Assembly (NCBI RefSeq): GCF_039654945.1
Contig: NW_027361832.1
Location: forward strand, 10,602,001-10,666,000
Direction of reading: 5' to 3'
Length of the DNA: 64,000 nucleotides
Origin: Dendrobates tinctorius
Lineage: Eukaryota
Shown: positions 2,332-63,160 of the stretch, in pieces
How positions within the stretch are numbered: position 1 is the stretch's first letter
How the letters are laid out: every line of letters starts with the position of its first letter
Made by a program: the position numbers and the translations under genes
Notes under the pieces: generated by a model
What the model was told of the DNA's origin: nothing
Seen by the model: the letters and a program-made list of their open reading frames with translations, nothing else
Databases searched by the model: none

Positions 2332-4044
2332 CTAGGCACTTTGTGCATTATCTGCCTGGACAGTAAGATCATCTGGTGCATCATCTGTCTGGACATCAGG
2401 AACATCGCCTGCCTGGACAGCAGGATCATCTGCCTGAACAGCAGGTTCATCAAGTTCATCATCTGCCTGGACTGCAGGATCATCATCTGCATCATCTGCC
2501 TGGACAGCAGGATCATCGGGTGCATCATCTGCCTTGACAGCAGGATCATCGGGTGCATCATCTGCATCATCTTCCTTGACAGCAGGATCATCGGGTGCAT
2601 CATCTGTGTGGACAGCAAGATCATCATCATCATCATCGCCTTGGAGATGAAATTCATCAATTACATCAACTGCTTGGACAGGAGATTCATCGAGTGCATC
2701 ATCCGCCTGACTGACACATTCATTAGTGTTGTCCGTTTGGTGGAAAGTTGAATCTTCATCTGCGATGTTATCGTTCTGGTCATCTTGGTGAGGTGTATTA
2801 GTATCCTGTTCGTCATCCTCATCAAGCAAGTCATCTTCCTGCGTAACACAATCATTTGGATCGTCAGGGATCACGGCTGCAGAATTTACATACAAGAAAC
2901 TTTCCAGCTTCTCCTCAGGAATTCGTCTCAGTTTGATTTCCCGGTTTCGAAACTTTTTCCGATGCAACTTTTCAGCTAGTTTCAAGTCTTCGTCAGATGA
3001 GAAGCTAACCAACGCTTCCCCTAGGCCAACTCCACGTTTGTCACATAGCAGTGAAATGTCTTCTTCATTGAGAGACAAGCCAGCGAAGAACTTCTGAATG
3101 TCACTTTTCTTCACAGCTGGAAGAAAGTTTCGAACAAGAACGCATTTGCCCCTTGAACGATGATGCGAGAATAATACTCTCCTGCCTGATATCAGATTTG
3201 TCATGTTTGACTTAGTAATAGGATTGATGAACAGAAGACGTCCATTAAACTTTACTTTGTCAAGTTGAAGAACTCTCTTGAAGTCCGCCTCCGTTTGTAA
3301 TGCAACCAAACATTCTCTTGTTCGCATGCCCTTCTTGTCATGCAGAAACAGAATGTGTTTCTCACTCACAAGGTTGAAAAACCAATTCCTCAAAGCTTTT
3401 TTCTTAGTGGTACAGTCCAGGTTGGTCACATGCACATGATAGTCACCATTGTATAAAAGATCATAGGACAGATCTTGTGAAGAGCTTGTATGCCTTTGGG
3501 GAGACCCAGATCTCACATGAGGAGATCGAGAACGAAATCGTGGCGATCTAGAATGACTTTGAGAAGACCGAGAATGCCATGGTGGCGATCTTGTATACCT
3601 TTGCTGAGGCGGCGGATATCTTTGCGGAGATCTAAAATGCCAGTGTGGTGACCTAGATCTCTGAAACGATGAATCAGAAAACCTTTCAGGAGACCTTGAA
3701 CGGTGACCTCCCACTTCATGCCCTGGTGTAAAAGAATGACGTGATAAAGAATCTCTGCCCTTATGGACTCCATTTCTAGACATGTCAAAGTTTTTTAAGG
3801 AGTGAGCCATTTCTGATATAGAGCTGCGATGAGCATAAATAATGGACCCCCTTAGGGAGCGGCCAGATAATCGAACAGCATGTTGTGCATCTACACGAGA
3901 GGTGAAGCTAACATAAGCCACACCAGAATGACCACCAATGATCGTAATTCCTCCTTGGGGAATATCCAATCCTATAAAGTGTGATCGAAGGTCTTGTAGG
4001 TTAACAGCAGATGAAACACCTTCTAAACGGACAATTTGTGACAT
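2332..4044 (-). CDS. rbm12b: RBM12B-like RNA-binding protein, paralogue A (570 aa): RRM1, RSP heptad array, two further RRMs, acidic repeat tail
   Basis: Intact ORF. N-terminus IVRLEG..DLRSHFIGLDIPQGGITIIGG..GVAYVSF matches RBM12/12B RRM1. VRNF..VKKSDIQKFFAG..EDISLLCDKRGVGLGEALVSF matches RBM12B RRM4. Splice acceptor (ccccccag|GTAAAAATG) lies 6 nt before the ATG. Neighbours CIBAR1 as in mammals. Confidence 0.85.
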   Translation of the reverse strand: MSQIVRLEGVSSAVNLQDLRSHFIGLDIPQGGITIIGGHSGVAYVSFTSRVDAQHAVRLSGRSLRGSIIYAHRSSISEMAHSLKNFDMSRNGVHKGRDSLSRHSFTPGHEVGGHRSRSPERFSDSSFQRSRSPHWHFRSPQRYPPPQQRYTRSPPWHSRSSQSHSRSPRFRSRSPHVRSGSPQRHTSSSQDLSYDLLYNGDYHVHVTNLDCTTKKKALRNWFFNLVSEKHILFLHDKKGMRTRECLVALQTEADFKRVLQLDKVKFNGRLLFINPITKSNMTNLISGRRVLFSHHRSRGKCVLVRNFLPAVKKSDIQKFFAGLSLNEEDISLLCDKRGVGLGEALVSFSSDEDLKLAEKLHRKKFRNREIKLRRIPEEKLESFLYVNSAAVIPDDPNDCVTQEDDLLDEDDEQDTNTPHQDDQNDNIADEDSTFHQTDNTNECVSQADDALDESPVQAVDVIDEFHLQGDDDDDDLAVHTDDAPDDPAVKEDDADDAPDDPAVKADDAPDDPAVQADDADDDPAVQADDELDEPAVQADDPAVQAGDVPDVQTDDAPDDLTVQADNAQSA

Positions 4045-4843
4045 TTTTACCTGGGGGGACAGAATTAAAAAAAAAAAAAAACGACTTTAGATTTTTTTTA
4101 ATCATCTCAGCTTAGAAGAACATACTAATAAATGAATGTAAAAACATGTTTTTCATTAATGAAAACGTGAACCACAGAGATGGAAGTACAAACAGCATAT
4201 CTATTTTTTACTTCATGTCCATGTTAGTTTGGACCTTAAAGGATTATTCCATGCTCTGGCCACAAAGCACGAGACTTCAGAAACTCCAGAGAGAAACAGC
4301 AAAAGGCAGCCCTTGCCTGTCCCTAGAGCCCTGCAGGCTGGCGCATATACAGTTATTACTGTCTCAGCAACGACTCACTAAAATCACGATCCCAAGATGA
4401 TTTTTTTGACGCTTCCTATTTTCATTGCTCCGGAGACATTGGAGTCTTAGGCTATGTTCACAGTAGGCATTAATTTTACATTTTACAGTACCAGCAAAGT
4501 ATGAGATTTCAGAAACCTGATGCACTTGTTTCTTTTGTGACTTTGCTTGTCATTAAGGCTATGTGCCCACGTTGCAGAAATGCTGCGGAATTGTCCGCAG
4601 CATTTCCGCAACTCCCCGCCGCGAGTAAAACGCATGCGGAGCTTGCATGCGTTTTCCCCGCAAAACACAAGCATTTTTAGCCTGCAGAATGCTAGCGCAT
4701 ATCCAAGCGATTTGAAGCAGCTTGGAAAAGTGATTGACAGGTTGGTCACACTTGTACGCTTGACAAGTGTGTCCAACTTTTTACTACTGATTTGTGCCTG
4801 GGCTGTATTGAATTATCAGCTATTCACTTCTATCTATATAGAC

Positions 4844-5850
4844 CAGGGGTCCCCAACCGCCGGTCCGCAGCCCACCACCGGGCCGCTGCAGTGCCCTTGC
4901 CGGTCCGCGGACACAAGGGGAGCCAGGGGCGGTCAGTGGCGTAGCGGGGGCTGCGCGCAGCAGTTCTTAGCGGCGGCCAGGGAGCGATCCAAGCAGCTCC
5001 GCTGCCTGCAAGAGGGAATAGCAGGAGCGGAGCTGCAAGGACCCGTCCACTGCGTCCAGCTTCCTGCCCGCCGCCCGCGCTTCCTGTCTGACTGACACAG
5101 AGAGGAGCGCGGCCGCTGCTGTGTCAGAGCGAGGAAGCGCGGGCGGCGGACAGGTGAGAGGAGAGAGGTGGTGTGTGTGTGTGTGTGTGTGTATGTATGT
5201 CTGTCTGTGTGTGTACATATATATATGTGTGTGTGTGTGTGTGTGGTCTGTGTTTGTGTAGCCTGGCCCTGGAGGAGATGGGGACATGAGGAGAAGGCCA
5301 TGAGGGGAGTGATGGAGAGACGGCAGTGATGGGGTGAAGGCAATGATGGGGAGAGGGGAGTGATGGGGTGAAGGCAATGATGGGGAGACGGGAGTGATGG
5401 GGTGAAGGCAATGATGGGGAGACGGGAGTGATGGGGAGAAGGCAATGATGGGGAGACGGGAGTGATGGGGAGAAGGCAATGATGGGGAGACGGGAGTGAT
5501 GGGGAGAAGGCAATGATGGGGAGACGGGAGTGATGGGGAGACAGCAGTGATGGGGAGAGGGGAGTGATGGGGAGAAGGCAATGATGGGGAGAAGGGAGTG
5601 ATGGGGTGAAGGCAATGATGGGGAGAAGGGGGTGATGGAGCACTCATTCAAAACCTATGGTGAGTTGAGTCACATTATAAATGTTATTTAATTATAAGTA
5701 TGCACTGCTACACTACAACCGTGTCCATAGCCCCGCCCCTTATGACCAAAGCCCCGCCCCTGTCACACCTCCATCCCCGCCCTGCCGGGCCATGGAAGAA
5801 TGGTCTTGCTTGAAACCGGTCCCTGGTGCAAAAAAGGTTGGGGACCACTG
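4844..5850. mobile_element. Non-autonomous hAT (Charlie-like) element containing a TG microsatellite and a 33-bp G-rich minisatellite
   Basis: TIRs CAGGGGTCCCCAACC / GGTTGGGGACCACTG. Perfect 8-bp TSD ATATAGAC at 4836-4843 and 5851-5858. Confidence 0.85.
5300..5640. repeat. ~33-bp purine-rich minisatellite (ggagtgatggggagaaggcaatgatggggagac)
   Basis: About 10 tandem units, directly visible. Confidence 0.9.
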
Positions 5851-6789
5851 ATATAGACTGTATATATGTTTTCATGAATATTTGAGGCCATGGATCCATT
5901 ATATGTCCATTTTGCAAGCCGGCGAGAAAATCTCACCATATGGATGTCACACGGATGGTTAGATGCGAGAAAATCATATCCTCGCATTGCGCAAGGATGA
6001 CACACGGATCACTGTTCAGGGAACATTTCTGCGATTCTCGTCTGTAGAAAACGGACCGTATTTTTATACGTTGTGTGTAACTCCAGCCTTGCACAAAGCA
6101 CCATCACTCCACAAGGCACACACTGTGATCCGGCAGGTTACACATGCAGTCAGATGACACTGGAACTGGTGACCAGCAGGTAGAATACTGCACTCTGAGA
6201 AAAACCTTTGTTATTGCTAACAAAGGGGAAAATAACCACAGTGCTCTATAAACACTTAATGGACAAAACTTGCAATTCTCCATCACATTTTCTGCACTTT
6301 ATAAACAAATGGTGCAAAGACGTCAGCATCCATACAAAGGAGATTCACATAACTATATCAAAGACCACCTTCCACATCTGTCCACACCGCTGCTCAGACG
6401 CTGAATGCATCCAGTACAGTCGTCCCTATCTGGGCAACTATCGGACGTGCAGAATGATGAGGACAACTGGGTAGCTATGATCAGATCACACGACAGAAAA
6501 AGAAGGTAGTTACAGGTTCTCCTTCAAAAGGTGCATCTGCTGATTATGGCCCCACTAGACACCCCTATAAGTGAGCTGTCGGCTTTTTCTGACAAACCCA
6601 CCAAACAACTGTCACCCAGGAGTGAGAAATAAGATGTGGACTGTAGGCAGCTGGTGCCCTGCACACCAAATCCCAGATATGTCCGGCTACTGATGGCCCT
6701 AGAGAATGGCTGATGACACGTACAGTTTTTTTGTTTTTTTAAATTGGTCTGAAAGGAACGGGAAGGAAAGAAAAATTATATATACATAC

Positions 6790-7234
6790 ACACCTGCATC
6801 TCACAAAATTAGAATATCATCAAAAAGTTAATTTATTTCAGTTTTTCAATACAAAAAGTTTATCTCATACATTATATAGAGTCATTACACACAGAGTGAT
6901 GTATTTCACGTGTTTATTTCTGCTAATGCCGCATTAATGCAGTAATTGATGCAAAAGGAGCCCCGACCAAGTATTGAGTGCATTTACTGAACATACATTT
7001 CAGTAGGTCAACATTTCAGATTTTAAAATCATTTTTCAAGCTGGTGTTATAAAGTATTCTAATTTACTGAGATAATGACTTTTGGGTTTTCATTGGCTGT
7101 AAGCCATAATCATCAACATTAACAGAAATAAACACTTGAAATAGATCACTCTGTGTGTAATCACTCTATATAATATATGAGATTCACTTTTTGTATTGAA
7201 GAACTGAAATTAATTAACTTTGATGATATTCTAA
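6790..7234. mobile_element. Internally deleted Tc1-derived element, right end running into the gap
   Basis: Inverted arms (ttagaatatcatcaaaaagttaatt / aattaactttgatgatattctaa). Internal Tc1 transposase 3' end (gcagtaattgatgcaaaaggagccccgaccaagtattga). Confidence 0.65.
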
Positions 7235-7395
7235 NNNNNNNNNNNNNNNNNNNNNNNNNNNNNNNNNNNNNNNNNNNNNNNNNNNNNNNNNNNNNNNNNN
7301 NNNNNNNNNNNNNNNNNNNNNNNNNNNNNNNNNNNNNNNNNNNNNNNNNNNNNNNNNNNNNNNNNNNNNNNNNNNNNNNNNNNNNNNNNNNNNNN
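7235..7395. other. Assembly gap (161 N)
   Basis: Run of n. Confidence 0.99.
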
Positions 7396-7640
7396 ATAGT
7401 TTTCTGCTGTTAAACCACTTTGGTATTTTGAACTTTTTTTTTCTGCTTCAGGTTTTGAAAACTCCTAGTGGGAAAAAATAAAGTCCATACAACGGCTATG
7501 AAGCGATTTCTGATTGAAAGAACTCGGACTAGTCACTGTCCAATCAAAAGGCTTGGAGAAAATTACTGGATACAGCTGAAAAGAGAGTATGGAAATATAC
7601 AGAGAAGGGACAGCACATCGTGCAGGGTGAGACAGGTAGT

Positions 7641-9140
7641 AGCCCCCCCCCCCCATCATACAGCTCCCATCATACGGCTGCACAGCCCCCCCCCCCCCAT
7701 CATCATAAAGCTCCACCGCCCCCTCCCTCTCTTCAGAGCTCCAGGCCCCCCCCCCCAGTCATACGGCTCCACCGCCCCCTTCCCCTCAACATACGGCTCC
7801 ACCGCCCCCTCCCTCTCTTCAGAGCTCCAGCCCCCCCCCCCCAATGATACGGCTCCACCGCCCCCCTCCCCCAATGATACGGCTCCACCGCCCCCCTCCC
7901 TCTTCAGAGCTCCACAGCCCCCCCAATGATACGGCTCCACCGCCCCCTCCCTCTCTTCAGAGCTCCAGGCCCCCCCAACATACGGCTCCACCGCCCCCCT
8001 CCCCCAATGATACGGCTCCACCGCCCCCCTCCCTCTTCAGAGCTCCACAGCCCCCCCCCCAATGATACGGCTCCACCGCCCCCTCCCTCTTCAGAGCTCC
8101 ACAGCGCCCCCCCAACATACGGCTCCACCGCCCCCCTCCCCCAATGATACAGCTCCACCGCCCCCCTCCCTCTTCAGAGCTCCACAGCCCCCCCCCCCAA
8201 TGATACGGCTCCACCGCCCCCCTCCCTCTTCAGAGCTCCACAGCCCCCCCCCAATGATACGGCTCCACCGCCCCCCTCCCTCTTCAGAGCTCCACAGCCC
8301 CCCCCCCCAATGATACGGCTCCACCGCCCCCCTCCCTCTTCAGAGCTCCACAGCCCCCCCCCAATGATACGGCTCCACCGCCCCCTCCCTCTTCAGAGCT
8401 CCACCGCCCCCCCCCAATGATACGGCTCCACCGCCCCCTCCCTCTTCAGAGCTCCACCGCCCCCCCCTCTTCAGAGCTCCAGCCCCCCCCCCCCCCAGTC
8501 ATGCGGCTCCACCTCCCCCTCCTCTCTTCAGAGCTCCAGCCCCCCCCCCCCCCAGTCATACGGCTCCACCGCCCCCCTCCCTCTCTTCAGAGCTCCACAG
8601 CCCCCCCAATGATACGGCTCCACCGCCCCCCCCTCTCTTCAGAGCTCCAGGCCCCCCCCCCTCAGTCATACGGCTCCACCGCCCCCCTCCCTCTTCAGAG
8701 CTCCACAGCCCCCCCCCCCAATGATACGGCTCCACCGCCCCCCCCTCTCTTCAGAGCTCCAGGCCCCCCCCCCCCAGTCATACGGCTCCACCGCCCCCCT
8801 CCCTCTCTTCAGAGCTCCACAGCCCCCCCCCCCCAATGATACGGCTCCACCGCCCCCCCCTCTTCAGAGCTCCAGGCCCCCCCCCAGTCATACGGCTCCA
8901 CCGCCCCCCCCCTCTTCAGAGCTCCAGGCCCCCCCAGTCATACGGCTCCACCGCCCCCCTCCCTCTCTTCAGAGCTCCACAGCCCCCCCCCCCAATGATA
9001 CGGCTCCACCGCCCCCCCCTCTTCAGAGCTCCAGCCCCCCCCCCAGTCATACGGCTCCACCGCCCCCCCCCTCTTCAGAGCTCCAGGCCCCCCCAGTCAT
9101 ACGGCTCCACCGCCCCCCCCCTCTCTTCAGAGCTCCAGGC
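7641..9140. repeat. C-rich minisatellite with ~60-bp unit (tgatacggctccaccgcccccctccctcttcagagctccacagccccccccaa)
   Basis: More than 20 tandem variant units. It generates the spurious Pro- and Gly-rich ORFs in the track. Confidence 0.95.
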
Positions 9141-9169
9141 CTCCCCTCCTTGATGCCCATGTGCTCGGT

Positions 9170-9620
9170 GTCGTCTCCGTGCACTGGCCATATCACGCGT
9201 GCACAGAGGGCGCGGGGCCTGGAGCAGCTGCTCCCTGGACTCCGAGTAACACAATCGTCGTCAGCCATCCGGCCGCCACGGTGTAATGGCGGCAGCCAGC
9301 CGGAAGCGCCGCGCCAAATCCTTCCAGACAGAAGCGCCGTGATCTCGGCGACCGTGCGCCGTCATTACAGGCAACTACAACCCAAGGATCGTCTACACAA
9401 CGTTCTCGCTTTCCGGCACCTACCGTACGCAGAGCGCGGTCGCCAGTTACCAGTCCTCGCCAGCGGCCTTACCTGTCGTGACGTCACTTCCCGCTTCAGG
9501 ACGGAAGTACTCTGACGCCTAATTTAGTCGCCAAATCGTTTAAAGGAGAAGTGACCTTAATCTGATTGGCGGGCGCGGCTGCCATAGACCGCACAATAGC
9601 GTGCTCTATACTGGAGCATG
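9170..9620 (-). promoter_or_regulatory. CpG-island promoter and probable non-coding exon 1 of RBM12B-like A
   Basis: CpG-rich. CRE TGACGTCA at 9479-9486, ETS-type GGAAGT motifs on both strands, CCAAT box (ctgattggc ~9562). Minus-strand donor CAG|GTAAGG at 9473/9472. Confidence 0.6.
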
Positions 9621-11631
9621 GCGGGGCCAGGAGAGCAGAGACCCTCCAGCTAGTGCAGACCCCAGCCCTCTCTCCTCCCAGGGCTGCCGGGGTAGGGACC
9701 AGGACGTTATTGGAAGGAGTGTGCCCCGTCAGAACAATCTAGTGGGATAAGTGTGAGATTACTGGGGGTCCGGTTGTCAGGCGGTCGCTTAGATGCAGTC
9801 TACTAAGTCGGAGTGTCTACCTCCAGCAGGCGTATACACCCGAAACCCATGCCCATCAAAGCTCGGGCACTCTGCCAGCATCATTACAGTCTATGACCCC
9901 ATCAGCGCACACGTCCGAATCCTATTTTGCTGGGGGGGGGGTTCAGACATGAGCCTCAATGGGGCCAATGAACCGGTGCCAAACCGCAGTGTGAACGCCG
10001 CCTTAGAAGGCGCAGCAGTGCACACGGTCAGCCGCCATGCCAGTCACTATGGGACCGCTGAGCGCTTGGCTGTCTCTGGTAGCAACACAGCACTGAGAAT
10101 GGAGCACAGTTGACGCATACGCACTGCAGCACCTTCTAACAGGGAGAAAAGTGCCCCATTGTAGTGATTAGGGAAGGGCATCAGGTTTAATGGACAGACC
10201 CCCACCAGTCTTTACGGTATCAGTATCACCTACAACTATATCCCTTTAAGAAGCATGCAGGAATGAGATTAAGGACTCAGCCCAGAAGACTTGCTTGGTT
10301 TCTGTAAGTGTCACTGTTTCCAAGGGGCGTTGCCATATAAAGTTTATTGGCATGTTATAACAATTCACATAACAGATCCAAATGCCGCACGCACTAATTA
10401 ACAGGGTATTATTGCTTCAATCGTTTCAGCACAAGAGTGAGCAGGGCTGGTGATAAAGTGTCCACAGATACCGTCTGGCACGCATGTCTAGTACAGGTGT
10501 GCGATATCGGCCAGTAGATATCTACAGACAAAACATCAATGGGCCTGCACAAATCCCAATACTATAATGTGCTGAGCCACCCTAACCCTTTAAGGATGAG
10601 GTTCTCGATTATTGCAAAATTAGCATTTAATCTCAGTAGTTAAACCCATTACTAATAGGATTATTCTCAACCACAACATCAAGAGTCAGTATTGGGCCAT
10701 CTTTTTAAGCATTAGTAATGACCTTTTAGTGGGCATACATGCAAAATTACAACCAAACCTGTGGACACGCTTGATGCTGTTCTTGGAAGAAAGAAATGTT
10801 TTCTAGTCCAGGACAACACTTGTAGTTTTAGAGGGCTAGTCATTGCCTTTTGAACTATAATAATATCCCAGTGATGTCACCTTGTCCATGGTTGGCCTTT
10901 AGAAGGTAGAGGATTAAAAAAATATTAGAAGTAGCAACTCTCTCTCGAACTCATCATCCATGGTCTGCGCGCACGCATGTGTGTATATGATGTCTCTATC
11001 TCAACACTGGAATGGCGCTTTAAATGTAAGCCCCCTGCCCATGGTCATATACCCACCCTCGGCATCTTTCTGCACGGCTCCGGTCCTATCTTGTGGCACT
11101 AGCTTCTGGAAGTAAGAAGCTAGGTAACAAGCTCTTAATGCAAGTCTATGAAAGCCAGAACGAGGCTCAGACTTGTAAAGTGACCTCTGCGCCACTTCAT
11201 GAAACATTGGAGCAGCACACAGGTTACTTTTCAGACCGACTAGAGCAGCAGTGAAAGCATTGGAAGGCCAGTATCAAGACAGGATTTACATTTAAAGCAC
11301 CAAGCACCACTCCATCAGTGCAATAAAAAAAAAACCAAAAAAAAAAACTGGCGTGTAGAAAAATCAAAATGCTGGTAAAGTAGTAATTCACAGACAATTG
11401 CAGTTTTAATAAAATACAAGTTTATTGAAAATACAGTAGACATGGCTCAATCTGAGATGCCCAAAGCCTTCCCCCTAGTGTTATTATGCGGCATAAGAGC
11501 AGAATGATCCGTCATTGACTGACCCAGCTTCCTGAATTACAGCATCTTCTAGGCCAGCTTCAACCATTTGACATTCAAGGTTCGAGTTTGGACTAACTGT
11601 GGCTCTCTTAAGTCGAACTCAACGGACACTT

Positions 11632-12028
11632 AGGGTGGGTTCACATTGCGTTAGTGCCCTGCGTTTAACGCATCCGTTACACAGCGGCACTAACGCTATG
11701 TAACGGTCGCATTAACGCACCCATTGGCCGCAATGTTAGTAATGCATCCTAACACGTGCCTAATTCAGCATGCGTTAGCGATGATGCGTTACTTGTGACG
11801 CACCCGAGAACGTGGTCTAGAGCGTTTTTGGGTATGTCTGGTCTAACGCACAGCGAACGGACACATTCGCTGTGCACAGACCTGTATGGCTAACGCATGG
11901 TAGCAAAATGCTACCATGCGTTAGCAGTAGGTGCACAAAAGATGTAAAAAAAAAAATGACATCTGCGTTAGCGCATCCGTTTAACGCATCCGTTAAATGG
12001 ATGCCCCTAATGCAATGTGAACCTAGCC
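11632..12028. mobile_element. PIF/Harbinger-like MITE
   Basis: Terminal inverted repeats gggtgggttcacattgc / gcaatgtgaacctagcc, with T(T/A)A-type flanks. Confidence 0.65.
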
Positions 12029-12865
12029 TATACGACTAGGAGGCTGTTGAGTTCAGGTAGGGGGATCTATGACTAGTCGAGACACTGCGGTCCATAAATG
12101 TCAAACCTATGAAACAAACCTCACTGTCAGCAGACTGTGTCAGCGACTTTTCGAACATATTTGCCTATAGTCCTCAGGGGACAGTTTTGTTGCTCTGTAT
12201 TCTGATAGAAGGCAAAAAGTAGTTAAAAACACAGGTACATACGTTCTTCGCTTACGTTTCAAACATTGCATTTTAAAGCTGCAAACAGCCCTTGAAGGAT
12301 GCATATCAACCTTGACGTCTCAAAATTGCTCAACCTAATGTGCACTTTATATACCCATACACATTAGCTGGTAACATGTTGAACTTCGAGATTTTGTAAA
12401 GACTGGCCTACCCTCGACTGTGCACGGGGAACCTCCCAACCATACCCTGGAGATACACACAAGACAAAAGAAGGGTCAGGCATGTTGTGTGATTCATCTT
12501 GACCGTTCCAAAAGGTAGGTTACATTAAAACGTTAACAATATATACATGCTCTGTGGAATAACAAAGTAGCCCCTGCCCTTCTATACAGTACACTACTGT
12601 TACCGCAACATTTCATATGGACATAATATACCAGATAGCTGCGATATAAATACTGACTGAATTCCAAGCAAAAAAATATACAAGTTGGCACCTTGTTGGT
12701 TTATTGACTGATTTAAGTTATTACTGGAGATCAAGAAGGAACTCCACTAGTTTTAAAGCAGATACATGTCGGTTATCTAAAATGTCAACTTAAAAGGACC
12801 CCATATACAGACTATAATGTTGGCCGATGTCGTCGGCCGGCTGAGACTGTCCAATTTCAGACCGC

Positions 12866-13091
12866 TAGGGTTGATCGAATAGCTTTGGATAAGTGCTTAT
12901 CAAGTCTGTGTGACAGTCAAAACACATGCAAGGAGAGCCTGTTTGTTGTGACTGTCACACAGCCGTGACACATGCAGCTGCGGCTCCAAACAGCTGATTA
13001 TCAGGAGCGATCCATGTTACCGAGGCAGCTATTCGGTAAGTGCTATAGTTATTCGGATAACCTCTTATCCAAAGCTATTCGATCATCCCTA
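12866..13091. mobile_element. Palindromic MITE of the tagtgatgagcg...cgctcatcacta-like family
   Basis: tagggttgatcgaatagctttggataag ... cttatccaaagctattcgatcatcccta. Related copies at ~24690-24900, 43860-44115 and 54899-55093. Confidence 0.6.
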
Positions 13092-13709
13092 TAGACCGCC
13101 GATTGCATTGTTCTCTTGGAAGTAAGCCGCTGGGTAAGGTCGTCTGCTTTCTCATCAGAACACCAGAGAGCTCAGCGAAGCACTCTTGTGTACATGGGAG
13201 ATGGGTATGGGCCAAATGATCAATCGGCAGTTATCTAATGCATAATGGGGATTTTAATCCCATTTCCAGCCATTAAAATAATACATTTTCAAGTCTTGAT
13301 GAGCAGCATTTATTCCCATTTCAAAATTATCTTTAAATTTAAAAAAAAACAACAAACTTTTATTTCTTGCAATCAGATATACAAATTATACATAAAGTAA
13401 CACAATATGGTAGCAATAAAGTAATTTTGTTTGATGCAAATATTTGTTAGAATTAGGCTGTGGCATCCAATCAAAACCTTACTGAAATGTCAAGCCCATA
13501 TATCTGCACAAGGCCAGAGGTGTTCGATTTACGAGCTGTAATACAATTCTTTGGATCCTGACCGTACAAGACACGGTTTTGATTATATAATGGATTCTAG
13601 GTAACTGACAAGTGCTTAGTTGTGTTATTCTCTATCAAAACAAAATTAGAATCTGCCAGCAATAGCGGCAAGTCCCATACAGATATAGTCTTTGTACAAC
13701 TGAATGTCC

Positions 13710-15032
13710 TCAGTCCAAGTGAGCACTTATTAGGGAGTCACTGCCAGCATCACATGTCACCTCTGACGATTCGTCCGCCTCACTGACACTTATATCAGCT
13801 TCACACGTAGACAACTTTTGATTAGCTGTAGAATGGTCCACGATAAAGTAGACGCCAAAAGCCTTCAGCTGCTTCTTCGAGACGCATCTCAGCAGGATCT
13901 CCGTGTCCTGGAACCTATTGTGGTTTAGTTTCTCGGCTTCGGATGCTTCCTCTTTCTTTGAGAATTTGACAATAGCTTCCCCAAGGCAGTCCCCATTGTC
14001 ATCATATAACAGACAAATGTCCTGTTCAGTCAGAGAAAAGCCAGAAAAAAAGTTGAGAATGTCATATTTATTCACGCAAGCGGCAAAGTTTCTTAAATAT
14101 AAGAATTTAACACCAGACTTCTTTTTAATGTCCTCTGAACCTGGATCCCCCAAGACGACGTTTTTCTTGCTCTCGATTAAGTCCATCATGTTGGCTTTAG
14201 AGACGGGCAGCACTCGCAGACGACGACCCCGGAAAACCGCTTTGTCCAACTCGAGAGCTCGTACGTAATCATTTTCGGTTACGAACATCACAAAACATTC
14301 CCGCTGTCTGTTGCCATTTTTGTCATACACAAATGTGATCTGAGAGTCCTCGACAAGGTTGTGCAGAAACTTCCTTATGAGGGATTTGTCAGCATGGAGG
14401 CTTACATTTACCAGATGTGCATAAAACTCGTGAATGTACAACAAATGGTGGTCATACTTTGGTAACCACTTGCAAGTTGAATTTTTCAGATTTTTCCTCG
14501 ACGAATCACATTTTGCAGAGTGGGAGAGCCAATCCATTTCACTTGATGGCCACATGGACAATACAGAAAATGTATTTTGACTCTTACAACAATTTTTATT
14601 TTCAGACGCCTGAAATGCTAACAAGGCCTTTTCGGCGTCGTCACCTTTTCCAAATTTAACACAGGCTATGCCGCTCCTAACTTTATACCTTGTCATGAAA
14701 ATTACATTTTCCACGTACAATTCTGTAAAAAAGCTTTTCACATGAGAAAGTTTGGCATTTAAGGGTGTAAACATAATACGCAAATAGCTGCAGGTCTGCG
14801 GAGAACTACACCAAGCCGAAATATTTATAGGACTGTTCATTAGGAATTTTCCCGACCTGTTTAGAGCTAAACATGAGGAAATTCTTTCCTCAAAAGTAAC
14901 GTAAGCCTCTCCATACACCCCACCAATAATAGTAACACCTCCATCCCGAATCTTTAATCCAGTAAAGAAACGTCGAATGTGAATAGCGTCTGCGATCGGC
15001 GGGAGACCTTCTAGCCGCACCGTCAGTGACAT
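13710..15032 (-). CDS. rbm12b: RBM12B-like RNA-binding protein, paralogue B (440 aa): four RRMs and a short acidic tail
   Basis: Intact ORF. VRLEGLPPIADAIHIRRFFTGLKIRDGGVTIIGGVYGEAYVTF is RBM12B RRM1-like. LYLRNF..DICLLYDDNGDCLGEAIVKF..AEKLNHNRFQDTEILLR is RRM4-like. Acceptor caacag| at 15057/15056. Confidence 0.88.
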   Translation of the reverse strand: MSLTVRLEGLPPIADAIHIRRFFTGLKIRDGGVTIIGGVYGEAYVTFEERISSCLALNRSGKFLMNSPINISAWCSSPQTCSYLRIMFTPLNAKLSHVKSFFTELYVENVIFMTRYKVRSGIACVKFGKGDDAEKALLAFQASENKNCCKSQNTFSVLSMWPSSEMDWLSHSAKCDSSRKNLKNSTCKWLPKYDHHLLYIHEFYAHLVNVSLHADKSLIRKFLHNLVEDSQITFVYDKNGNRQRECFVMFVTENDYVRALELDKAVFRGRRLRVLPVSKANMMDLIESKKNVVLGDPGSEDIKKKSGVKFLYLRNFAACVNKYDILNFFSGFSLTEQDICLLYDDNGDCLGEAIVKFSKKEEASEAEKLNHNRFQDTEILLRCVSKKQLKAFGVYFIVDHSTANQKLSTCEADISVSEADESSEVTCDAGSDSLISAHLD

Positions 15033-16314
15033 TCTTACTCAATATACTTTTTTTTCCTGTTGATATATAAAAGAGGCACACATGTTTAGTTATACACAGC
15101 AGGGATTCTCCAAAATTAAACATCCCCCCACCCAGTACTTTTTGTGCATATGCAGAGGGATTAACCCATAAATCACCACGTCCATCGTGGCTGTAATATG
15201 GTGACTGTCATGCCAGAGACAAATCCACACTACAAACTCCACTACATTAGGCGGTAGAGCAAACAGTGTTACATGGGCTCTGCATCTAACCCTAGCAAAA
15301 TAAAACTAATATTAAACATTCTGTATAGAAACAGAATGATGAAGCTCCCAACTGGCACCCTGTGAGCCCGCTCCATACACCCACTTCCGACTTGTGCCAT
15401 ACATGTATGGCGCCTGTCATGGAGGGTTTAAGACTTCTTTTTCTCTGTCATACAAGTAGCATGCCCATCCACTTAGTATACATGTAGATAAAATACACCT
15501 AGCGCTTTTTGCAGATTTCAGGCGGTTAGAACTGCGGACAGATTTGCTTTTAACGGTTCCTTCTGGTGTTTTCATCTGCTGCCAGATTACACCAGACAGT
15601 GGTAGAGGAAAGCTGGTAGAACAGGCAGTAGTAATCCAGAGTTTTGTAGAGGTTATAATGGGAAAAATTCATCATCAGGGTCGTCTTATAAAAATGTTTC
15701 TTTATTAGAGAAAGTAAAAAGTCACATTTTCCATCACCAGAGACAACAAGCTAATGCATTTCAGGCACACTCTTCAGAGTTGCAATGTCTAAAGACAGAC
15801 TGAAACATGTTTGCTTGTTATTTGTTGGTGATGGAAGTTGTGACTTTTTACCATTTCCAATAAACATATGTTTTTACAAAAAGACCATAATGATGAATTT
15901 TTCCATGATACGTGTATTTCACCATGTCTCTGCACATCCGTTCTCCTAGTGGATGAGCTGACAATTTCCAACAGGTTTGTTGGGAAGAATTCTGAATAAA
16001 TTGTGTTTTAGTCATTTCAGTTTAGGAGTCCGTTTAGAATTTAGATATTTAGAAATTGTATTGTGGCTGTCTAACAGCTGTTAAATCGCAAACATATTAG
16101 TCGAGCACGCCTGAGATACTCAGATAACACGACATCCGAGCACGCTCCCTCATCACTAGTAGCCATCTTTGCACAGCTGTCCTACAATGAAAACTGACAG
16201 TCTCTGAACACAACTGCTCCTCGATTCCAAATCATAGAACTTGGAATTAAGTTATACTGAATGTTTTCCCACACAATTAGTCAGCTATCAATCTGCTGAG
16301 ATCCTTCTGATCTA

Positions 16315-17947: not shown

Positions 17948-17999
17948 TATAACATGCTGTCTAAAGCAAAGACTACATGAATGACAGGTTCCTATGGTC

Positions 18000-21149: not shown

Positions 21150-22221
21150 TTAGTCCACTATGGGACTAAAAATCTCAAAAAAAAAAAAGTGAAAAGCAAA
21201 AAAAAAAAAAAAAAGAAAAGAAACAATTGTATTTTTTTTTTTTTAGCAAATAAAATCAATCGCCTTCTCCCTAGTTAATGGGGTTGTTCACCAGTTAATT
21301 TCTGACAAGCTGCCCAGCTTGCTTAATCTTCGCGGTGTGTAACATACACATCCTTAGGATTTGGCTCCACTCCTCGGTCTCAGGAGTCCTCATGGGACAC
21401 CATTTACGCTTTTTGCATACTTGTGGTCATGTGCAAACTAGATTTTCTGCCTCTTGCCTCAATGTTCTGTTGAGACACGCGGCCGAGTTGTTACGTGACC
21501 TCAAGTATGAAAATAGCATAAATGTCATTGGGTGACGACCACTGCAACCGCAGACAAATCCTAAGGGAAAGTAACGTACACACAGGCTATGTGCACACAT
21601 GGGGGTGTTTTTTTTGTCACCTGAAAGAAATCGGGTCAATTGTGCAAATGACACTCTGATCATACTGTGCTCAGATTCTCCCTAATGAGAAGATGGAGAA
21701 AAAAGAAATGTCTTCATACTCTCAGTGCACAGATGGGACCGCACGCAGATGTCATCCGACTGCAGTCCGATGTCTTCCAGGCATCCATAAACTTGCATGG
21801 CCCAGTGCGATTTGAATATCAGATCAAACACAGGCATGCAATGATTTTTTTTTTTCTCTCCTTGGGCAGTCTCTGTCCGAGAAAAAAATAAATAAATCAC
21901 GACACCATGGAATAACATTGGTCTGGGCGAGTTCTCTTTTACCGACATATGACATACTGGTACGTCGTATGCCTGCTCGCAAGCCAAGCCCACGTTTCAT
22001 GGCACATGAGGGCTGATTTAACCAGCGATCATGTGCCTCTAACATCCACAGGGTAAGCAAATAAGTGGTTAGTCTATTAATTTCCACTGTCTATCTCTGA
22101 CACCTGCTGGCAGGGGGGGCGCATCATTCCTCCCGCCCAATGGCGCACCCGTGATGTGATTGCAAGGTGCAGATGGATTGTCATAACGAGAGATGGGCAA
22201 ATATCTTCGGCTCCTTCCTTA

Positions 22222-22645
22222 GGCTAGTTTCACATTTGTGCTTTTGAGCACGGCCGCCACTAAGCCCCGCCCCATGCCGCGCCTCCACCGGTAGCTCCGC
22301 CTACCGGCGCATGACGCTGCATGCGTCCCCTATCTTTATCACTGGGGGCGCAGGCCGTGCGCAGTATGCGTTTGGCGGCGCATGCGTCCTTTTCACGGTG
22401 CGCCGAGCGCAACCAAACTGCAGCAGGTTGCGTTTGGCACTGGTCGGCGCACCGTGAAAAGGACGCATGCGCCGCCAAACGCATACTGCGCATGACCTGC
22501 GCCCCCAGTGATAAAGATAGGGGACGCATGCAGCGTCATGCGCCGGTAGGCAGAGCTACCAGCGGAGGCGCAGCAGGGGTCGGGGCTTAGCGGCGGCCGT
22601 GCGCAGGCCGTCGCTGCGCTCAAAATCGCAAATGTGAAACTAGCC
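22222..22645. mobile_element. Near-perfectly palindromic Harbinger-like MITE nested in another MITE (~22190-22800)
   Basis: TIR ggctagtttcacatttg / caaatgtgaaactagcc with TTA TSD. The + and - strand ORFs here translate almost identically. Confidence 0.8.
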
Positions 22646-24129
22646 TTATTCGGCTATAGCGCTTACCGAATAAGCTGCTGCGGGTACCCGGATCGCTCCT
22701 GATCAGCGCCGCAGCTGCATGACAGTTACAACACTTGCATGGAGAGCCCAACAAACTGGCTCTGAATAAGGAGGGAGCTGAAGATATTCGCTCATCTACT
22801 CATAACAGCCGGGGGTCTGCTGAACACCCCCCCACTCCTGTCATCACAATCCTCCTTTGAAAGCCAACCTGAGACCGGCGTTCAAAGGGGATTGTGATTT
22901 TTTATATATAGCGGTGCTGATGCACAGCTACGTACAGCACAAGTGATCAGACGATCGCAGCTTCCAGTCCCCCAATGGCCATATTAAATATACAGTAAAA
23001 ATATATTTTTTTAAATCCTGAAAAAAAAAAAAAAAGTTCAAATCACCCCCCCTTTGCCACGTTAAAAATAAAATAAATTTGGTATCCCTGCGTTCGTAAA
23101 AGTCTGATCAAAATATAAAATAATTTGTTTGGTAAATAATGAAATAAGAAAAATTTTAAATTCCAGAATTACTTTTTTGGGGGGCTGCCGCAGCACTGCA
23201 GTAAGATGCGATCAACACATTGTATGCACCCCAAAATTGTATCAGTAAAAACAAAAAATTGTCGCCCAGTCCCAGATCCCAAAAATTGAAAGTTAGGCTA
23301 TGTGCACACGTACGCAGAACATTTCTGCATGAAAACCCGACTCCTTCCCAGAAAATGCGCGTTTTTTATGCGTTTTTTTCCCACGCGTCCCCAGAAACAG
23401 AAAATAGCAAGAAATGCGGAATTTTCCGCGAAATTAATGAGCACGCTGCGCTTTTTTCCACGATGCAGTTTTCCCGCGGGAAAAAAACCAACGCATTAAT
23501 ATGCACAGAAAGTCCGGAATTCATTAAAATGAATGGGATGCTTCTTTTAAGCGTTTTTTTAAGCATTTTATTTGGTAAAAAAGCGGAAAAAACCCTGCAA
23601 CGTGTGAACACAGCCTTACGGTCTTTGGAAAAATGGCATTTTCCCCCCCCTCCAGTTAAAAATAATAATAAAAACACTTTACATGTTTGCTATCTGCATT
23701 CTCGTTCTGGCCTGGAGAATCATCAGGTCAGTTTTCCCGTATAGTGAACATGGCAAATAGGGAAAAAAAAAAAAAAAAATCTGTGAAATTGCACAATAAA
23801 AGCATTTTTTTTATTGCTGCATCTGTGAAGGTTTCATCTATCAGGATCTAAACTACTCTGACCCATACAGTAAACGTCGTACGGCAAAATAGAAAAAAAT
23901 AAAAATTAGAATAAAAATCGTTTTTTGTTGGCCGAAATCGCTCAGATAAAAAAAAAAAAATAAAAAGTGATCAAAACATCTAGCTTTAAAAGCGGCAGCT
24001 CAGCGTGCAAGAAACGTACGTCTCATCTCATACAGCTACAGAGGATGGAAAAAAAAGTGTTATGGGAACGGAAAACCACAAGAAAGAGCACAACAAAAAG
24101 TTGTTTCGTCATTGAGGGGTTAAATTAGC

Positions 24130-24560
24130 CGTGTGGAAAGGCGATACGTCCGACCCTGGCTCTCAAACACACACGGAGCCCTCTCCCCCCACCACAATGG
24201 CCTTCACCTGCCCCCACACGCCCATCCCCCCTTCCGGAATGCCATAGGAGTGGGCCACACAGTAACGTTCTGCCTCAGTTTCCGCCATGTAGTAAGGATA
24301 TAACAGCCCCGTTTGTCTCCCGCACATTACCGAAGCGGACACCGAGCAGTGCTCGACCGACTCAGACCTGCGTGCGCTCAACAATGACGTAAGGAGAACG
24401 CGCATGCGCAGCACATTTTGTGTGGAGGTGGCGGCGAGGACCTCCGCGCATGCGCGGTGATTTCAGTAGTCTATTGTTGGCAAGCGGTGTCCTGACGATG
24501 TCAGGGTGGGGGGATGAGCGCGGCCATGTGTGTGTGTGTGTGCTGGAGATACTGAGCTGC
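24130..24560 (-). promoter_or_regulatory. CpG-island promoter, probably of RBM12B-like B (non-coding exon 1)
   Basis: Two NRF1 palindromes GCGCATGCGC (~24400, ~24446), YY1-like CCGCCAT (~24282). Candidate minus-strand donors TCG|GTAATG (24331/24330) and CAG|GTGAAG (~24207). Confidence 0.5.
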
Positions 24561-36018: not shown

Positions 36019-36379
36019 GGACCAATATTCTTTGGTACTACTCCAATGTGCTGTCAGGTGGTGACCTGTAAAACGGTAATTAGACCTACCGGTAATTGTG
36101 TTTCCAGGAATCCATCCTGACAGCACTGTTAGATCCCTCCCGATAATACTTTTCATACAACTGTGATGTAACATGTGTATGGAGAAAGTTGGATTAAATA
36201 AAATCTGTTTGCATCCATCCAGAGGTGTTACTTTGTGAAATCACTGAGGGATGGGAAGGGGAGGATCCTTTTAAACTCTCGTGGTTTCCTGTCCCACTAC
36301 GGATGAGAAGGACGTCCTCCAATGTGCTGTCAGGATGGATTCCTGGAAACACAATTACCGGTAGGTCTAATTACCGTTT

Positions 36380-46153: not shown

Positions 46154-62691
<16,538 letters not shown>

Positions 62692-63150: not shown

Positions 63151-63160
63151 TGATGCTGTG

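What the first reader, a model, noticed from the sequence alone, without database searches (positions are those of the whole stretch)
2332..15032. Tandem pair of highly diverged, intact RBM12B-like paralogues with different domain losses
Seen: two uninterrupted ORFs (570 and 440 aa), each with its own splice acceptor and a candidate CpG promoter, very divergent from each other. Recalled: canonical RBM12B is ~1000 aa with five RRM-like domains. Copy B keeps RRM1-4. Copy A keeps RRM1, 3 and 4 but has an RS array where RRM2 should be. Both lack the long low-complexity region and RRM5. Inference: a lineage-specific, fast-evolving RNA-binding gene cluster kept intact within TE-saturated DNA. This is the best candidate here for an undescribed system, for example germline or maternal RNA regulation.
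Basis: partly seen in the sequence, partly recalled or inferred. Interest (0 to 1): 0.75.

Follow-up and report, generated by a model that had tools for sequence, protein, structure and literature searches.

The report
Two old frog RBM12B-derived genes
The window holds two intact, transcribed RNA-binding genes of the poison frog Dendrobates tinctorius that arose by ancient tandem duplication of RBM12B in frogs; they are conserved, already auto-annotated in other frogs but unstudied, and are not a lineage-specific novelty.

Summary
Both ORFs are real: A (2332-4044, minus strand, 570 aa) and B (13710-15032, minus strand, 440 aa). The N gap (7235-7395) lies between them and touches neither. The genome is almost certainly Dendrobates tinctorius.

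Each gene has a one-to-one orthologue across neobatrachian frogs. The B->A tandem order is kept in Ranitomeya, Phyllobates and Anomaloglossus. The ordinary RBM12B is a third gene 80-130 kb beyond A in those genomes, and CIBAR1 lies upstream.

Trees place A and B as sisters inside an anuran-only "12B-like" clade whose basal members still have five RRMs. A and B lost RRM5 and gained acidic tails with a conserved Cys-Val motif. The RS array of A is ancestral to A-type genes and sits after RRM2 in other frogs. Dendrobatoids deleted RRM2; the array did not replace it.

dN/dS is 0.4-0.6, significantly below 1, and no higher than in canonical RBM12B of the same species. Transcriptome-like contigs cover A's ORF. 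They also cover B from the predicted splice acceptor to about 300 nt past the stop. Tissue is unknown, so the germline idea is untested.

Verdict: functional, ordinary, unstudied paralogues. No paper in the library mentions them.

The parts
2332..4044 (-). Copy A: single coding exon, 570 aa plus stop (A-type RBM12B-like gene)
   Evidence: The ORF is intact. It is 82% identical to Ranitomeya variabilis LOC143782892 and has orthologues across Neobatrachia. Whole-gene omega is 0.48-0.62 with bootstrap upper bounds below 1. Eight transcriptome-like runs from two studies hold 0.97-0.98 of its sampled words.
4051..4085 (-). Predicted 3' splice site of copy A: T-rich tract, then AG at 4052-4051, 6 nt before the ATG
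   Evidence: Read directly from the sequence. Conserved in Ranitomeya, Phyllobates and Anomaloglossus. Not confirmed by reads, because the single read-laying run was used on copy B.
3820..4044 (-). A RRM1 (residues 1-75)
   Evidence: AF2 model, pLDDT 80-92, beta-alpha-beta-beta-alpha-beta topology.
3463..3771 (-). A RS/RSP-rich disordered region (residues 92-194), at the place where dendrobatoids lost RRM2
   Evidence: It has 17 RS/SR dipeptides and 6 RSP in 103 aa, with pLDDT below 50. In other frogs the same array follows an RRM2. No RRM2 remnant lies near A.
3187..3447 (-). A RRM3 (residues 200-286)
   Evidence: AF2 model and a Pfam RRM_1 match. Omega is 0.63-0.83, so it is relaxed compared with B's RRM3.
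2884..3150 (-). A RRM4 (residues 299-387), the most constrained domain
   Evidence: Best Pfam RRM_1 stretch is 302-371. AF2 model. Omega is 0.06-0.41.
2335..2856 (-). A acidic disordered tail (residues 397-570; 32% Asp) with motifs CVTQEDD (399-405, nt 2830-2850) and CVSQADD (443-449), and an 11-aa DDAPDDPAVQA-type repeat
   Evidence: C399-D405 are invariant in 17 A-type proteins. A 33-bp tandem repeat lies at 2425-2709. Composition and motif positions are. pLDDT is below 50.
13710..15032 (-). Copy B: single coding exon, 440 aa plus stop (B-type RBM12B-like gene)
   Evidence: The ORF is intact. It is 87% identical to its Ranitomeya orthologues, and full-length orthologues occur in hyloid, ranoid and microhylid frogs. 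Omega is 0.39-0.44. A 1653-nt contig in run X1 covers exactly 13410-15057.
15057..15080 (-). 3' splice site of copy B: AG at 15058-15057, 25 nt before the ATG
   Evidence: Sequence. Conserved in four species. Contigs of four runs end at 15054-15057. X9 record 28 and X5 record 18 continue for 99 and 29 letters that do not match the window. There is no coverage at 15100-15299.
13345..13709 (-). Copy B 3' UTR, with AATAAA at 13364-13359
   Evidence: Contigs reach 13410-13461. The poly(A) signal is read from the sequence.
14808..15032 (-). B RRM1 (residues 1-75)
   Evidence: AF2 model. phmmer match to hnRNP H qRRM1,2 with E 7.5e-7.
14517..14789 (-). B RRM2 (residues 82-172)
   Evidence: AF2 beta-alpha-beta-beta-alpha-beta topology. 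It aligns to RRM2 of canonical and A-type proteins. It has no significant PDB sequence match on its own.
14163..14429 (-). B RRM3 (residues 202-290)
   Evidence: AF2 model. VIA-align to ESRP1 qRRM2 gives Z 15.5, rmsd 2.1, 96 aligned. Omega is 0.16-0.20.
13857..14111 (-). B RRM4 (residues 308-392)
   Evidence: Pfam RRM_1 at 311-379. PDB RBM12 2cpy E 8.9e-9. Omega is 0.09-0.25.
13713..13856 (-). B short acidic tail (residues 393-440) with VSEADE (416-421; family consensus VCVSEADD)
   Evidence: Alignment A1. pLDDT is below 50.
7235..7395 (.). Assembly gap (161 N), intergenic between B and A
   Evidence: It does not touch either ORF and makes the B-A spacing an estimate.
9001..10000 (.). CpG island upstream of A; candidate distal promoter or 5' exon region
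   Evidence: GC 0.57-0.66 and CpG o/e 0.67-1.00. The 9108-9641 block is 85% identical to the region 2.9-3.4 kb upstream of A in R. variabilis. Function not shown.
4501..5500 (.). CpG-rich block 0.5-1.5 kb upstream of A's ATG; candidate proximal promoter, partly minisatellite
   Evidence: GC 0.54-0.60 and CpG o/e 0.62-0.82. A (GT)45 run and the start of a 34-bp minisatellite (5310-5638) lie inside it. Function not shown.
22001..25000 (.). CpG islands 7-10 kb upstream of B; candidate promoter region
   Evidence: CpG o/e 0.84-1.10 at 22001-23000 and 0.87-0.95 at 24001-25000. Colinear with R. variabilis upstream of B. Function not shown.
50986..58638 (-). Context: exons of CIBAR1 (FAM92 family), same strand, upstream of B
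   Evidence: Four ORF fragments match Pfam FAM92 in colinear order (profile positions 28-94, 95-116, 151-187, 198-225; E 2.6e-28 to 1e-4).

Best explanation
What they are. A and B are two functional members of an anuran-specific subfamily of RBM12B genes.

How they arose. RBM12B duplicated at the DNA level, in tandem, at its ancestral locus next to CIBAR1, early in frog evolution. One copy diverged into the "12B-like" lineage. On the stem leading to A+B this lineage lost the C-terminal RRM5 and kept or gained an acidic tail with a Cys-Val-Ser/Thr-x-x-Asp-Asp motif. It then duplicated again before crown Neobatrachia. The A-type expanded the short RS patch of RBM12B into a long RS/RSP array and grew a poly-Asp repeat tail. 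The B-type stayed a compact four-RRM protein. In the dendrobatoid stem, A lost RRM2 by an in-frame deletion.

Gene structure. Each gene has one coding exon, preceded by a 5'-UTR intron whose acceptor lies 6-25 nt before the ATG. The parent gene has the same structure.

Shown here. Intact ORFs in every species examined, conserved order and orientation, purifying selection strongest on RRM4 (and on RRM3 in B), transcription and splicing of B, presence of A's ORF in the same transcriptome-like runs, and quasi-RRM folds.

Inferred mechanism, moderate confidence. Both are hnRNP-like proteins that bind single-stranded RNA through quasi-RRMs of the hnRNP F/H, ESRP, GRSF1 and RBM12 class, probably at G-rich motifs. 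They would act in nuclear pre-mRNA processing as sub- or neo-functionalised relatives of RBM12B. A would work in an SR-like, phosphorylation-regulated way through its RS array. The conserved acidic tail motifs would be docking or CK2-type phospho-sites.

The confidence given applies to the identity and history. The molecular role alone would rate about 0.5.
For: - Orthology and age. A-type and B-type clades each have SH-aLRT 100 and each span Hyloidea and Ranoidea. A+B has 99, the 12B-like clade 100, and Anura 99, with salamanders, caecilians, amniotes and coelacanth outside. Basal D-type members keep RRM5.
- Synteny. The order is B->A head-to-tail, 17.6-24 kb apart, in R. variabilis, Phyllobates and Anomaloglossus, with canonical RBM12B 80-130 kb beyond A in convergent orientation. 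The window is colinear with R. variabilis. CIBAR1 lies upstream.
- Host and third gene. D. tinctorius RBM12B (P0066) is on a contig of the same length, 35,543,478 bp.
- Selection. Whole-gene omega is 0.48-0.62 for A and 0.39-0.42 for B, with bootstrap upper bounds of 0.52-0.84. RRM4 omega is 0.06-0.41.
- Expression. A's ORF is held at 0.97-0.98 in 8 runs from 2 studies, and at 0.55 in a close relative in 5 studies. Contig coverage of B is confined to the exon, ends at the acceptor, and in X9 and X5 continues with unlike letters.
- Gene structure. It is shared with the parent and conserved in 4 species.
- Folds.. qRRM matches reach Z 15.5.
- Architecture and motifs..
- Family context. Human RBM12B is an hnRNP-like, RNA-independent partner of SAFB proteins (PMC10901741).
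Against: - No RNA-binding, localisation or tissue data exist for these proteins, so the molecular role is inferred from fold and family only.
- The runs are labelled "RNA?" as a guess. RNA origin is inferred from exon-limited coverage and from contigs breaking at the acceptor.
- A's acceptor and all promoters are predictions.
- Omega of 0.4-0.6 is high for a housekeeping RNA-binding protein. Several domains approach 1 in some pairs (A RRM3; B RRM1 and RRM2), so parts of the proteins may be only weakly constrained.
- D-type rows have long branches and are unresolved at the base of the clade, so the exact order of early events is uncertain.
- Absence of A/B types outside Neobatrachia rests on a word-limited search and is not established.
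Confidence: 0.85

Rival explanations
1. One reading: a lineage-specific, fast-evolving RNA-binding gene cluster with a germline or maternal RNA-regulatory role, making it an undescribed system.
For: Omega of 0.4-0.6 is above what is typical for vertebrate genes (the typical level is from general knowledge). The stems of the A, B and 12B-like clades are long (0.32-0.6 changes per column), indicating early acceleration. The subfamily is restricted to frogs. No paper in the library mentions it.
Against: The pair is not specific to this species or family: there are one-to-one orthologues across Neobatrachia. Its current rate equals that of canonical RBM12B. There is no tissue information at all. 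Transcripts appear in runs of seven studies in two species, and complete ORFs sit on many 1.4-2.9 kb Logan contigs from other frogs. That looks more like broad expression than expression confined to one organ, but this is not proof.
Confidence: 0.1
2. B and A are not independent genes. They would be alternative terminal coding exons of one transcription unit, or would share a promoter and non-coding 5' exons with the upstream gene CIBAR1, as RBM12 does with CPNE1.
For: CIBAR1, B and A all lie on the minus strand in that order. Each coding exon starts with an acceptor right before its ATG. No CpG island lies within 7 kb upstream of B. RBM12 shares its promoter and 5' exons with CPNE1 (PMC2568002).
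Against: A conserved CpG island lies between B and A (9001-10000), and others lie between CIBAR1 and B (22-27 kb). These could serve as each gene's own promoter. The 5' exon joined to B was not identified, because the loose-end letters were not listed.
Confidence: 0.15
3. Retrocopies of RBM12B mRNA: intronless coding sequence inserted by reverse transcription.
For: The coding sequence is a single exon in both genes, and the surroundings are rich in retroelements.
Against: The parent gene also has a single coding exon. All three genes keep a 5'-UTR intron acceptor 6-25 nt before the ATG, and B's is used. They lie in tandem at the parental locus next to CIBAR1. Retroposition predicts none of this.
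Confidence: 0.03
4. Decaying duplicates: unprocessed pseudogenes that happen to be open in this assembly.
For: Omega approaches or exceeds 1 in some domain and pair combinations (A RRM1 1.03 for Dtin-Rvar; B RRM1 1.39 for Rvar-Pter), though each rests on few substitutions.
Against: The ORFs are intact in all four dendrobatoid genomes and in 15 or more other frog species, a span that by general knowledge exceeds 100 million years. Whole-gene omega is significantly below 1. The tail motifs are invariant. Both are transcribed.
Confidence: 0.02

Closest known systems
Canonical RBM12B (frog form 620-690 aa, e.g. D. tinctorius P0066, E. coqui P0022; human RBM12B is an hnRNP-like partner of SAFB1/2/SLTM, PMC10901741)
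   Same: Same gene lineage by phylogeny. Same locus next to CIBAR1. Same gene structure, with a 5'-UTR intron and one coding exon. Homologous RRM1-RRM4 of the quasi-RRM type, with VRLxGLP and GEAxV signatures. Similar omega in dendrobatoids.
   Different: Both A and B lack RRM5 and the RRM4-RRM5 linker. Both carry acidic tails with a CV(S/T)(E/Q)xDD motif that is absent from the canonical protein. A has a long RS/RSP array in place of a 7-residue RS patch and, in dendrobatoids, no RRM2. They are only about 27-36% identical to the canonical protein.
D-type 12B-like genes (Bufo gargarizans P0021, Leptobrachium P0023, Bombina P0025)
   Same: Same 12B-like clade, SH-aLRT 100. P0021 has a VSEADD motif after RRM4, like B.
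   Different: They retain RRM5, so they have five RRMs. In B. gargarizans this gene lies on a different contig (389.7 Mb) from canonical RBM12B (493.9 Mb). Their long branches leave their placement unresolved.
Quasi-RRM proteins hnRNP F/H, GRSF1, ESRP1 and Drosophila Glorund (bind G-tract or GGU-type motifs; established knowledge of these families)
   Same: Best structural matches for RRM1, RRM3 and RRM4: ESRP1 qRRM2 Z 15.5, Glorund qRRM1 15.1, hnRNP H/F 13.5-14.5, GRSF1 13.0. Sequence matches to hnRNP H. The GEA-x-V version of RNP1 lacks the canonical aromatic residues.
   Different: They are not orthologues. The residues that contact G-tracts were not checked here, and RNA specificity is untested.
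SR and SR-like splicing factors (compared with copy A only)
   Same: RRM domains plus an Arg/Ser-rich disordered region with 17 RS/SR dipeptides and 6 RSP in 103 aa.
   Different: The RS region is internal, not C-terminal. It is dominated by RSP/SP units and is followed by two more RRMs and a poly-Asp tail. It does not meet the classical SR-protein definition, which is cited here from general knowledge.

Membership tests
RBM12B gene family | Falls inside the RBM12B clade in a protein tree that includes tetrapod and coelacanth RBM12B | tested here: met
   A and B nest within anuran RBM12B (Anura 99, 12B-like clade 100, A+B 99), with salamander, caecilian, amniote and Latimeria RBM12B outside. 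RBM12 itself was not included as an outgroup.
RBM12B gene family | Five RRM-type domains, including a C-terminal RRM5 | tested here: not met
   B has four RRM folds and A has three, and neither has RRM5. They are therefore derived paralogues and not RBM12B proper.
RBM12B gene family | Gene structure: a single coding exon preceded by a 5'-UTR intron | tested here: met
   Acceptors lie 6 nt (A), 25 nt (B) and 24 nt (canonical) before the ATG and are conserved in 4 species. B's acceptor is supported by contig ends and loose ends.
RBM12B gene family | Genomic position beside CIBAR1 (FAM92A) | tested here: met
   FAM92 exons lie at 50986-58638 on the same strand. Canonical RBM12B is 80-130 kb beyond A in three relatives. 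That CIBAR1 and RBM12B are adjacent in mammals is from memory and was not tested.
RBM12B gene family | RNA-independent association with SAFB-family proteins (human RBM12B) | not testable with these tools
   Known only for the human protein (PMC10901741).
Quasi-RRM (hnRNP F/H-type) domains | RRM fold closest to solved qRRMs, with a GEA-type RNP1 that lacks the canonical aromatics | tested here: met
   VIA-align top matches are ESRP1, Glorund, hnRNP H/F, GRSF1 and RBM12 at Z 12.5-15.5 for residues 2-81, 198-293 and 303-395 of B. GEA is conserved in alignments A1 and A3. B's RRM2 was barely tested by the fold search.
Quasi-RRM (hnRNP F/H-type) domains | G-tract binding through loops 1, 3 and 5 | not tested
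   No residue-level comparison or binding assay was done.
Classical SR proteins (copy A) | N-terminal RRM(s) plus a C-terminal RS domain of at least 50 aa with more than 40% RS content (definition from general knowledge) | tested here: not met
   The RS region is internal (92-194). It has 17 overlapping RS/SR dipeptides in 103 aa, and two RRMs and an acidic tail follow it. It is SR-like at most.

The most novel reading that the evidence does not exclude
Frogs evolved a private subfamily of RBM12B-derived quasi-RRM proteins (D, A and B types). After losing RRM5 these proteins acquired new effector modules: an RS array and a poly-Asp tail with invariant CVTQEDD and CVSQADD motifs in A, and a VCVSEADD tail in B. 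They would carry out a frog-specific RNA-processing task, for example germline or maternal mRNA control, or SAFB-like suppression of transposon-derived exons in very large, TE-rich genomes. The modular losses in different lineages (RRM2 in dendrobatoids, the RS array in Eleutherodactylus) would reflect ongoing functional retuning.
Probability: 0.1. Interest if true: 0.5.

Novelty: new member of a known kind. Interest (0 to 1): 0.25.

Why it matters
The result turns an apparent oddity into an ordinary but tidy gene-family history. RBM12B, itself poorly understood, has three to four long-lived paralogues in frogs, each with a different domain make-up.

That offers a natural domain-deletion series for working out what the individual quasi-RRMs, the RS patch and RRM5 of RBM12B do. 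The series is five RRMs, then four RRMs, then three RRMs plus an RS array.

It also flags a strictly conserved short acidic motif as a candidate interaction site.

It changes no major view. The genes are already auto-annotated in other frog genomes, and nothing here points to a new kind of system.

Tried and rejected
- Pfam alone under-calls the domains (2-3 RRM_1 stretches). B's RRM2 has no significant PDB sequence match, so its RRM status rests on the AF2 topology and on homology to RRM2 of other family members.
- Cross-species non-coding conservation did not locate the 5' exons. Beyond Ranitomeya only about 0.3-0.5 kb upstream of each ATG aligns, so no 5' exon could be called.
- Tissue of expression could not be obtained. 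Run identities are coded, and cluster members from Logan carry no accessions.
- Four literature searches found no paper on frog 12B-like genes.
- Reads were laid on copy B, so copy A's exon structure was not examined with contigs.
- Branch-site and site models were not run, because there are only four taxa with coding DNA and no PAML. Nei-Gojobori estimates with codon bootstrap were used instead.
- The large representative-protein search, complex prediction and the ESM Atlas search were not used, because no claim here rests on absence of relatives or on binding.
- Rejected readings: pseudogenes, retrocopies, and the idea that one copy is the ordinary RBM12B (see rival explanations).
- The gap at 7235-7395 was not filled or looked up.

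Full report
OBSERVATION. Copy A is 2332..4044 on the minus strand (570 aa), and copy B is 13710..15032 on the minus strand (440 aa). They are clear paralogues, 33% identical over about 400 aa with E 1e-52. tblastn finds no further copy in the 64-kb window. The only N run is 7235-7395. It lies in the stretch between the two ORFs, so neither frame depends on it, and it only makes the 9.7-kb spacing an estimate. I did not fill it or look it up.

HOST AND LOCUS. Copy A's nearest relatives are dendrobatid proteins: Ranitomeya variabilis 82%, R. imitator 79%, Phyllobates terribilis 73% and Anomaloglossus 66%. B shows the same pattern at 87, 87, 82 and 74%. The window's proteins sit on a contig of 35,543,478 bp. 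That is the same length as the contig carrying "RNA-binding protein 12B [Dendrobates tinctorius]" (P0066). The window is therefore D. tinctorius, and the ordinary RBM12B is a separate third gene.

In R. variabilis, Phyllobates and Anomaloglossus the order is B then A, head to tail, 17.6-24 kb apart. Canonical RBM12B lies 80-130 kb beyond A in convergent orientation. Intergenic blocks of the window map colinearly onto the R. variabilis loci. The local order is CIBAR1 > B > A > ... < RBM12B.

PHYLOGENY. A 53-row tree and a 67-row tree rooted on coelacanth agree. Anuran RBM12B is monophyletic (SH-aLRT 99). It splits into a canonical clade (99; Ascaphus to neobatrachians) and a "12B-like" clade (100). 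Within the latter, A-type (100) and B-type (100) are sisters (99). Each contains hyloid and ranoid species, A-type also myobatrachoids, and B-type also a microhylid.

Three long-branch genes sit unresolved at the base: Bombina P0025, Leptobrachium P0023 and Bufo gargarizans P0021. All three still have a C-terminal RRM5, and P0021 has a VSEADD motif after RRM4. So the first duplication predates the Bombina split, RRM5 was lost on the A+B stem, and the A/B duplication predates crown Neobatrachia. The pair is old and conserved, not lineage-specific. The word-limited search does not establish that A/B types are absent outside Neobatrachia.

ARCHITECTURE. Canonical frog RBM12B reads RRM1, linker, RRM2, short RS patch (RTRSRSP), RRM3, linker, RRM4, linker, RRM5.
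- The AF2 model of B (18-sequence alignment, mean pLDDT 69.6) shows four beta-alpha-beta-beta-alpha-beta domains at 1-75, 82-172, 202-290 and 308-392, followed by a disordered tail.
- The AF2 model of A (17 sequences) shows three domains at 1-75, 200-286 and 299-387, with 92-194 and 397-570 disordered.
- The A-type alignment is decisive for the RS question. Bufo, Leptodactylus, Rhinoderma, Engystomops, Mixophyes, Pseudophryne, Pyxicephalus and Nanorana all have an RRM2 followed by the RS array. The four dendrobatoids, and one unidentified transcript (P0007), lack about 95 residues of RRM2. Eleutherodactylus copies keep RRM2 but lack the RS array.
- No RRM2 remnant lies near copy A; A-type RRM2 queries hit only B's RRM2.
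- So the RS array is an ancestral A-type expansion of the parental RS patch, and dendrobatoids deleted RRM2.
- A's RS region has 17 RS/SR dipeptides and 6 RSP in 103 aa. Its tail is 32% Asp and contains an 11-aa repeat, encoded by a 33-bp tandem repeat at 2425-2709.
- In the disordered tail, CVTQEDD (399-405) is invariant across all 17 A-type proteins. A second motif, CVSQADD (443-449 in D. tinctorius), is nearly so: V444, Q446, D448 and D449 are invariant. B-type tails carry VCVSEADD (VSEADE in D. tinctorius). The canonical protein has no such motif.

FOLD CLASS. B matches RBM12 and hnRNP H/F chains by sequence. By structure its best matches are quasi-RRMs: ESRP1 qRRM2 (Z 15.5, rmsd 2.1, 96 aligned), Glorund qRRM1 and qRRM2, hnRNP H/F, GRSF1 and RBM12. 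B's RRM2 alone has no significant PDB sequence match, and the fold search barely tested it.

SELECTION. Coding DNA of A, B and canonical RBM12B was taken from D. tinctorius, R. variabilis, Phyllobates and Anomaloglossus.
- Pairwise Nei-Gojobori dN/dS is 0.48-0.68 for A, 0.39-0.44 for B and 0.48-0.62 for canonical.
- Codon-bootstrap upper bounds stay below 1: A 0.64-0.84, B 0.52-0.63, canonical 0.60-0.90.
- RRM4 is the most constrained domain in all three genes (0.06-0.41). B's RRM3 is also tightly constrained (0.16-0.20), while A's RRM3 is relaxed (0.63-0.83).
- Canonical RRM2 has omega 0.8-2.0. This fits RRM2 being dispensable enough to be lost from A.
"Fast-evolving" applies to the whole family, including the parent, and not specially to this pair.

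EXPRESSION AND GENE STRUCTURE. Each ATG is preceded by a strong acceptor. A has T16 followed by ccccccag|gtaaaaATG, and B has tatatatcaacag|, 25 nt before its ATG. Canonical RBM12B has ttttgttttcag|, 24 nt before its ATG. All three are conserved in the four species. One shared structure, at one locus, argues for DNA-level tandem duplication and against retroposition.

Copy A's ORF is held at 0.97-0.98 of sampled words by eight runs of organism A from two studies, and at about 0.55 by ten runs of a close relative from five studies. All these assemblies are small (34-124 Mb of contigs). Four of these runs were laid on 12300-18290.
- X1 has one 1653-nt contig matching exactly 13410-15057.
- X15, X5 and X9 cover parts of the same interval.
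- Contigs end at 15054-15057, that is, at the acceptor.
- X9 record 28 and X5 record 18 continue for 99 and 29 letters that do not match the window.
- There is no coverage at 15100-15299.

This is the pattern of spliced cDNA and not of genomic DNA, although the records do not state RNA. An AATAAA at 13364-13359 lies about 45 nt beyond the contig end. Tissue identities are not disclosed. Complete ORFs on many 1.4-2.9 kb Logan contigs in other frogs suggest routine transcription there too.

Promoters are unproven. CpG islands lie at 4501-5500, at 9001-10000 (the 9108-9641 block is conserved with R. variabilis) and at 22-25 kb. The 7766-9137 GC-rich block is a 56-bp C-rich minisatellite.

WHAT IS KNOWN. 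No paper in the library mentions frog RBM12B-like genes. Human RBM12B is described as an hnRNP-like protein that binds SAFB1/2/SLTM independently of RNA (PMC10901741). RBM12 shares a promoter and 5' non-coding exons with its upstream neighbour CPNE1 (PMC2568002). That precedent keeps open a compound transcription unit of CIBAR1, B and A, which I could not test.

VERDICT. These are functional, conserved, auto-annotated but unstudied RBM12B-derived paralogues with derived domain architectures. They are most likely hnRNP-like quasi-RRM RNA-binding proteins in nuclear RNA processing, with A acting in an SR-like way. The germline or maternal idea is untested. Novelty is modest: they are new members of a known kind.

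Noticed in passing
window 50986-58638 (-): Exons of CIBAR1 (Pfam FAM92, profile positions 28-225 in colinear order) lie upstream of copy B on the same strand, so the RBM12B-like pair sits at the family's usual locus.
   Followed up: partly
window 7766-9137; 5310-5638; 5171-5259: A C-rich 56-bp minisatellite (about 25 copies, GC about 0.70) accounts for the long proline-rich ORFs at 7468-9515. A 34-bp minisatellite (9.7 copies, 94% matches) and a (GT)45 run account for the overlapping ORFs at 4933-5651. None of these are genes.
   Followed up: partly
window 16300-18100: A high-copy repeat absent from the orthologous R. variabilis position. It has contig depths of hundreds to thousands in all four runs laid, so it is an abundantly represented, probably transcribed, transposable element in the intron or upstream region of copy B.
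   Followed up: no
window 13750-15250: CpG observed/expected is 0.75-0.94 across copy B's ORF despite only 39-45% GC, well above the 0.15-0.5 of surrounding DNA. Copy A's ORF is also raised in part (0.5-0.85).
   Followed up: no
window 29353-38969: Retroelement ORFs: a LINE-type reverse-transcriptase fragment (29353-29931), a 764-aa pol-like ORF (32952-35246), and Ty3/gypsy-like RT, RNase H and integrase fragments on the minus strand (36367-38969). Judged from the translations only.
   Followed up: no
L007:10001-12079 (D. tinctorius canonical RBM12B, P0066) and L008: Canonical RBM12B of Dendrobates and Ranitomeya has an expanded decapeptide repeat (PQQRNPYDNR-like) between RRM3 and RRM4 that E. 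coqui and Xenopus lack. Its RRM2 shows omega 0.8-2.0 among dendrobatoids.
   Followed up: partly
proteins P0012, P0014, P0018 (Eleutherodactylus coqui): E. coqui has at least three A-type copies. P0012 and P0014 keep RRM2 but lack the RS array, which is the opposite loss to dendrobatoids. P0018 was not in that alignment.
   Followed up: no
proteins P0021, P0023, P0025: A third, five-RRM "D-type" 12B-like paralogue exists in Bufo gargarizans, Leptobrachium and Bombina. In B. gargarizans it is on a different chromosome-scale contig from canonical RBM12B. Whether D. tinctorius has one was not checked.
   Followed up: partly
window 63000-64000 (-): A GC-rich short-period tandem repeat gives runs of overlapping ORFs reading GAGCRMLGAGCR... 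This is repeat DNA and not a gene.
   Followed up: no
window 6795-7234 and 7396 onward: The sequence just before the assembly gap is a dispersed repeat. It matches several places, in both orientations, in the R. variabilis locus L001. That probably explains the assembly break.
   Followed up: no
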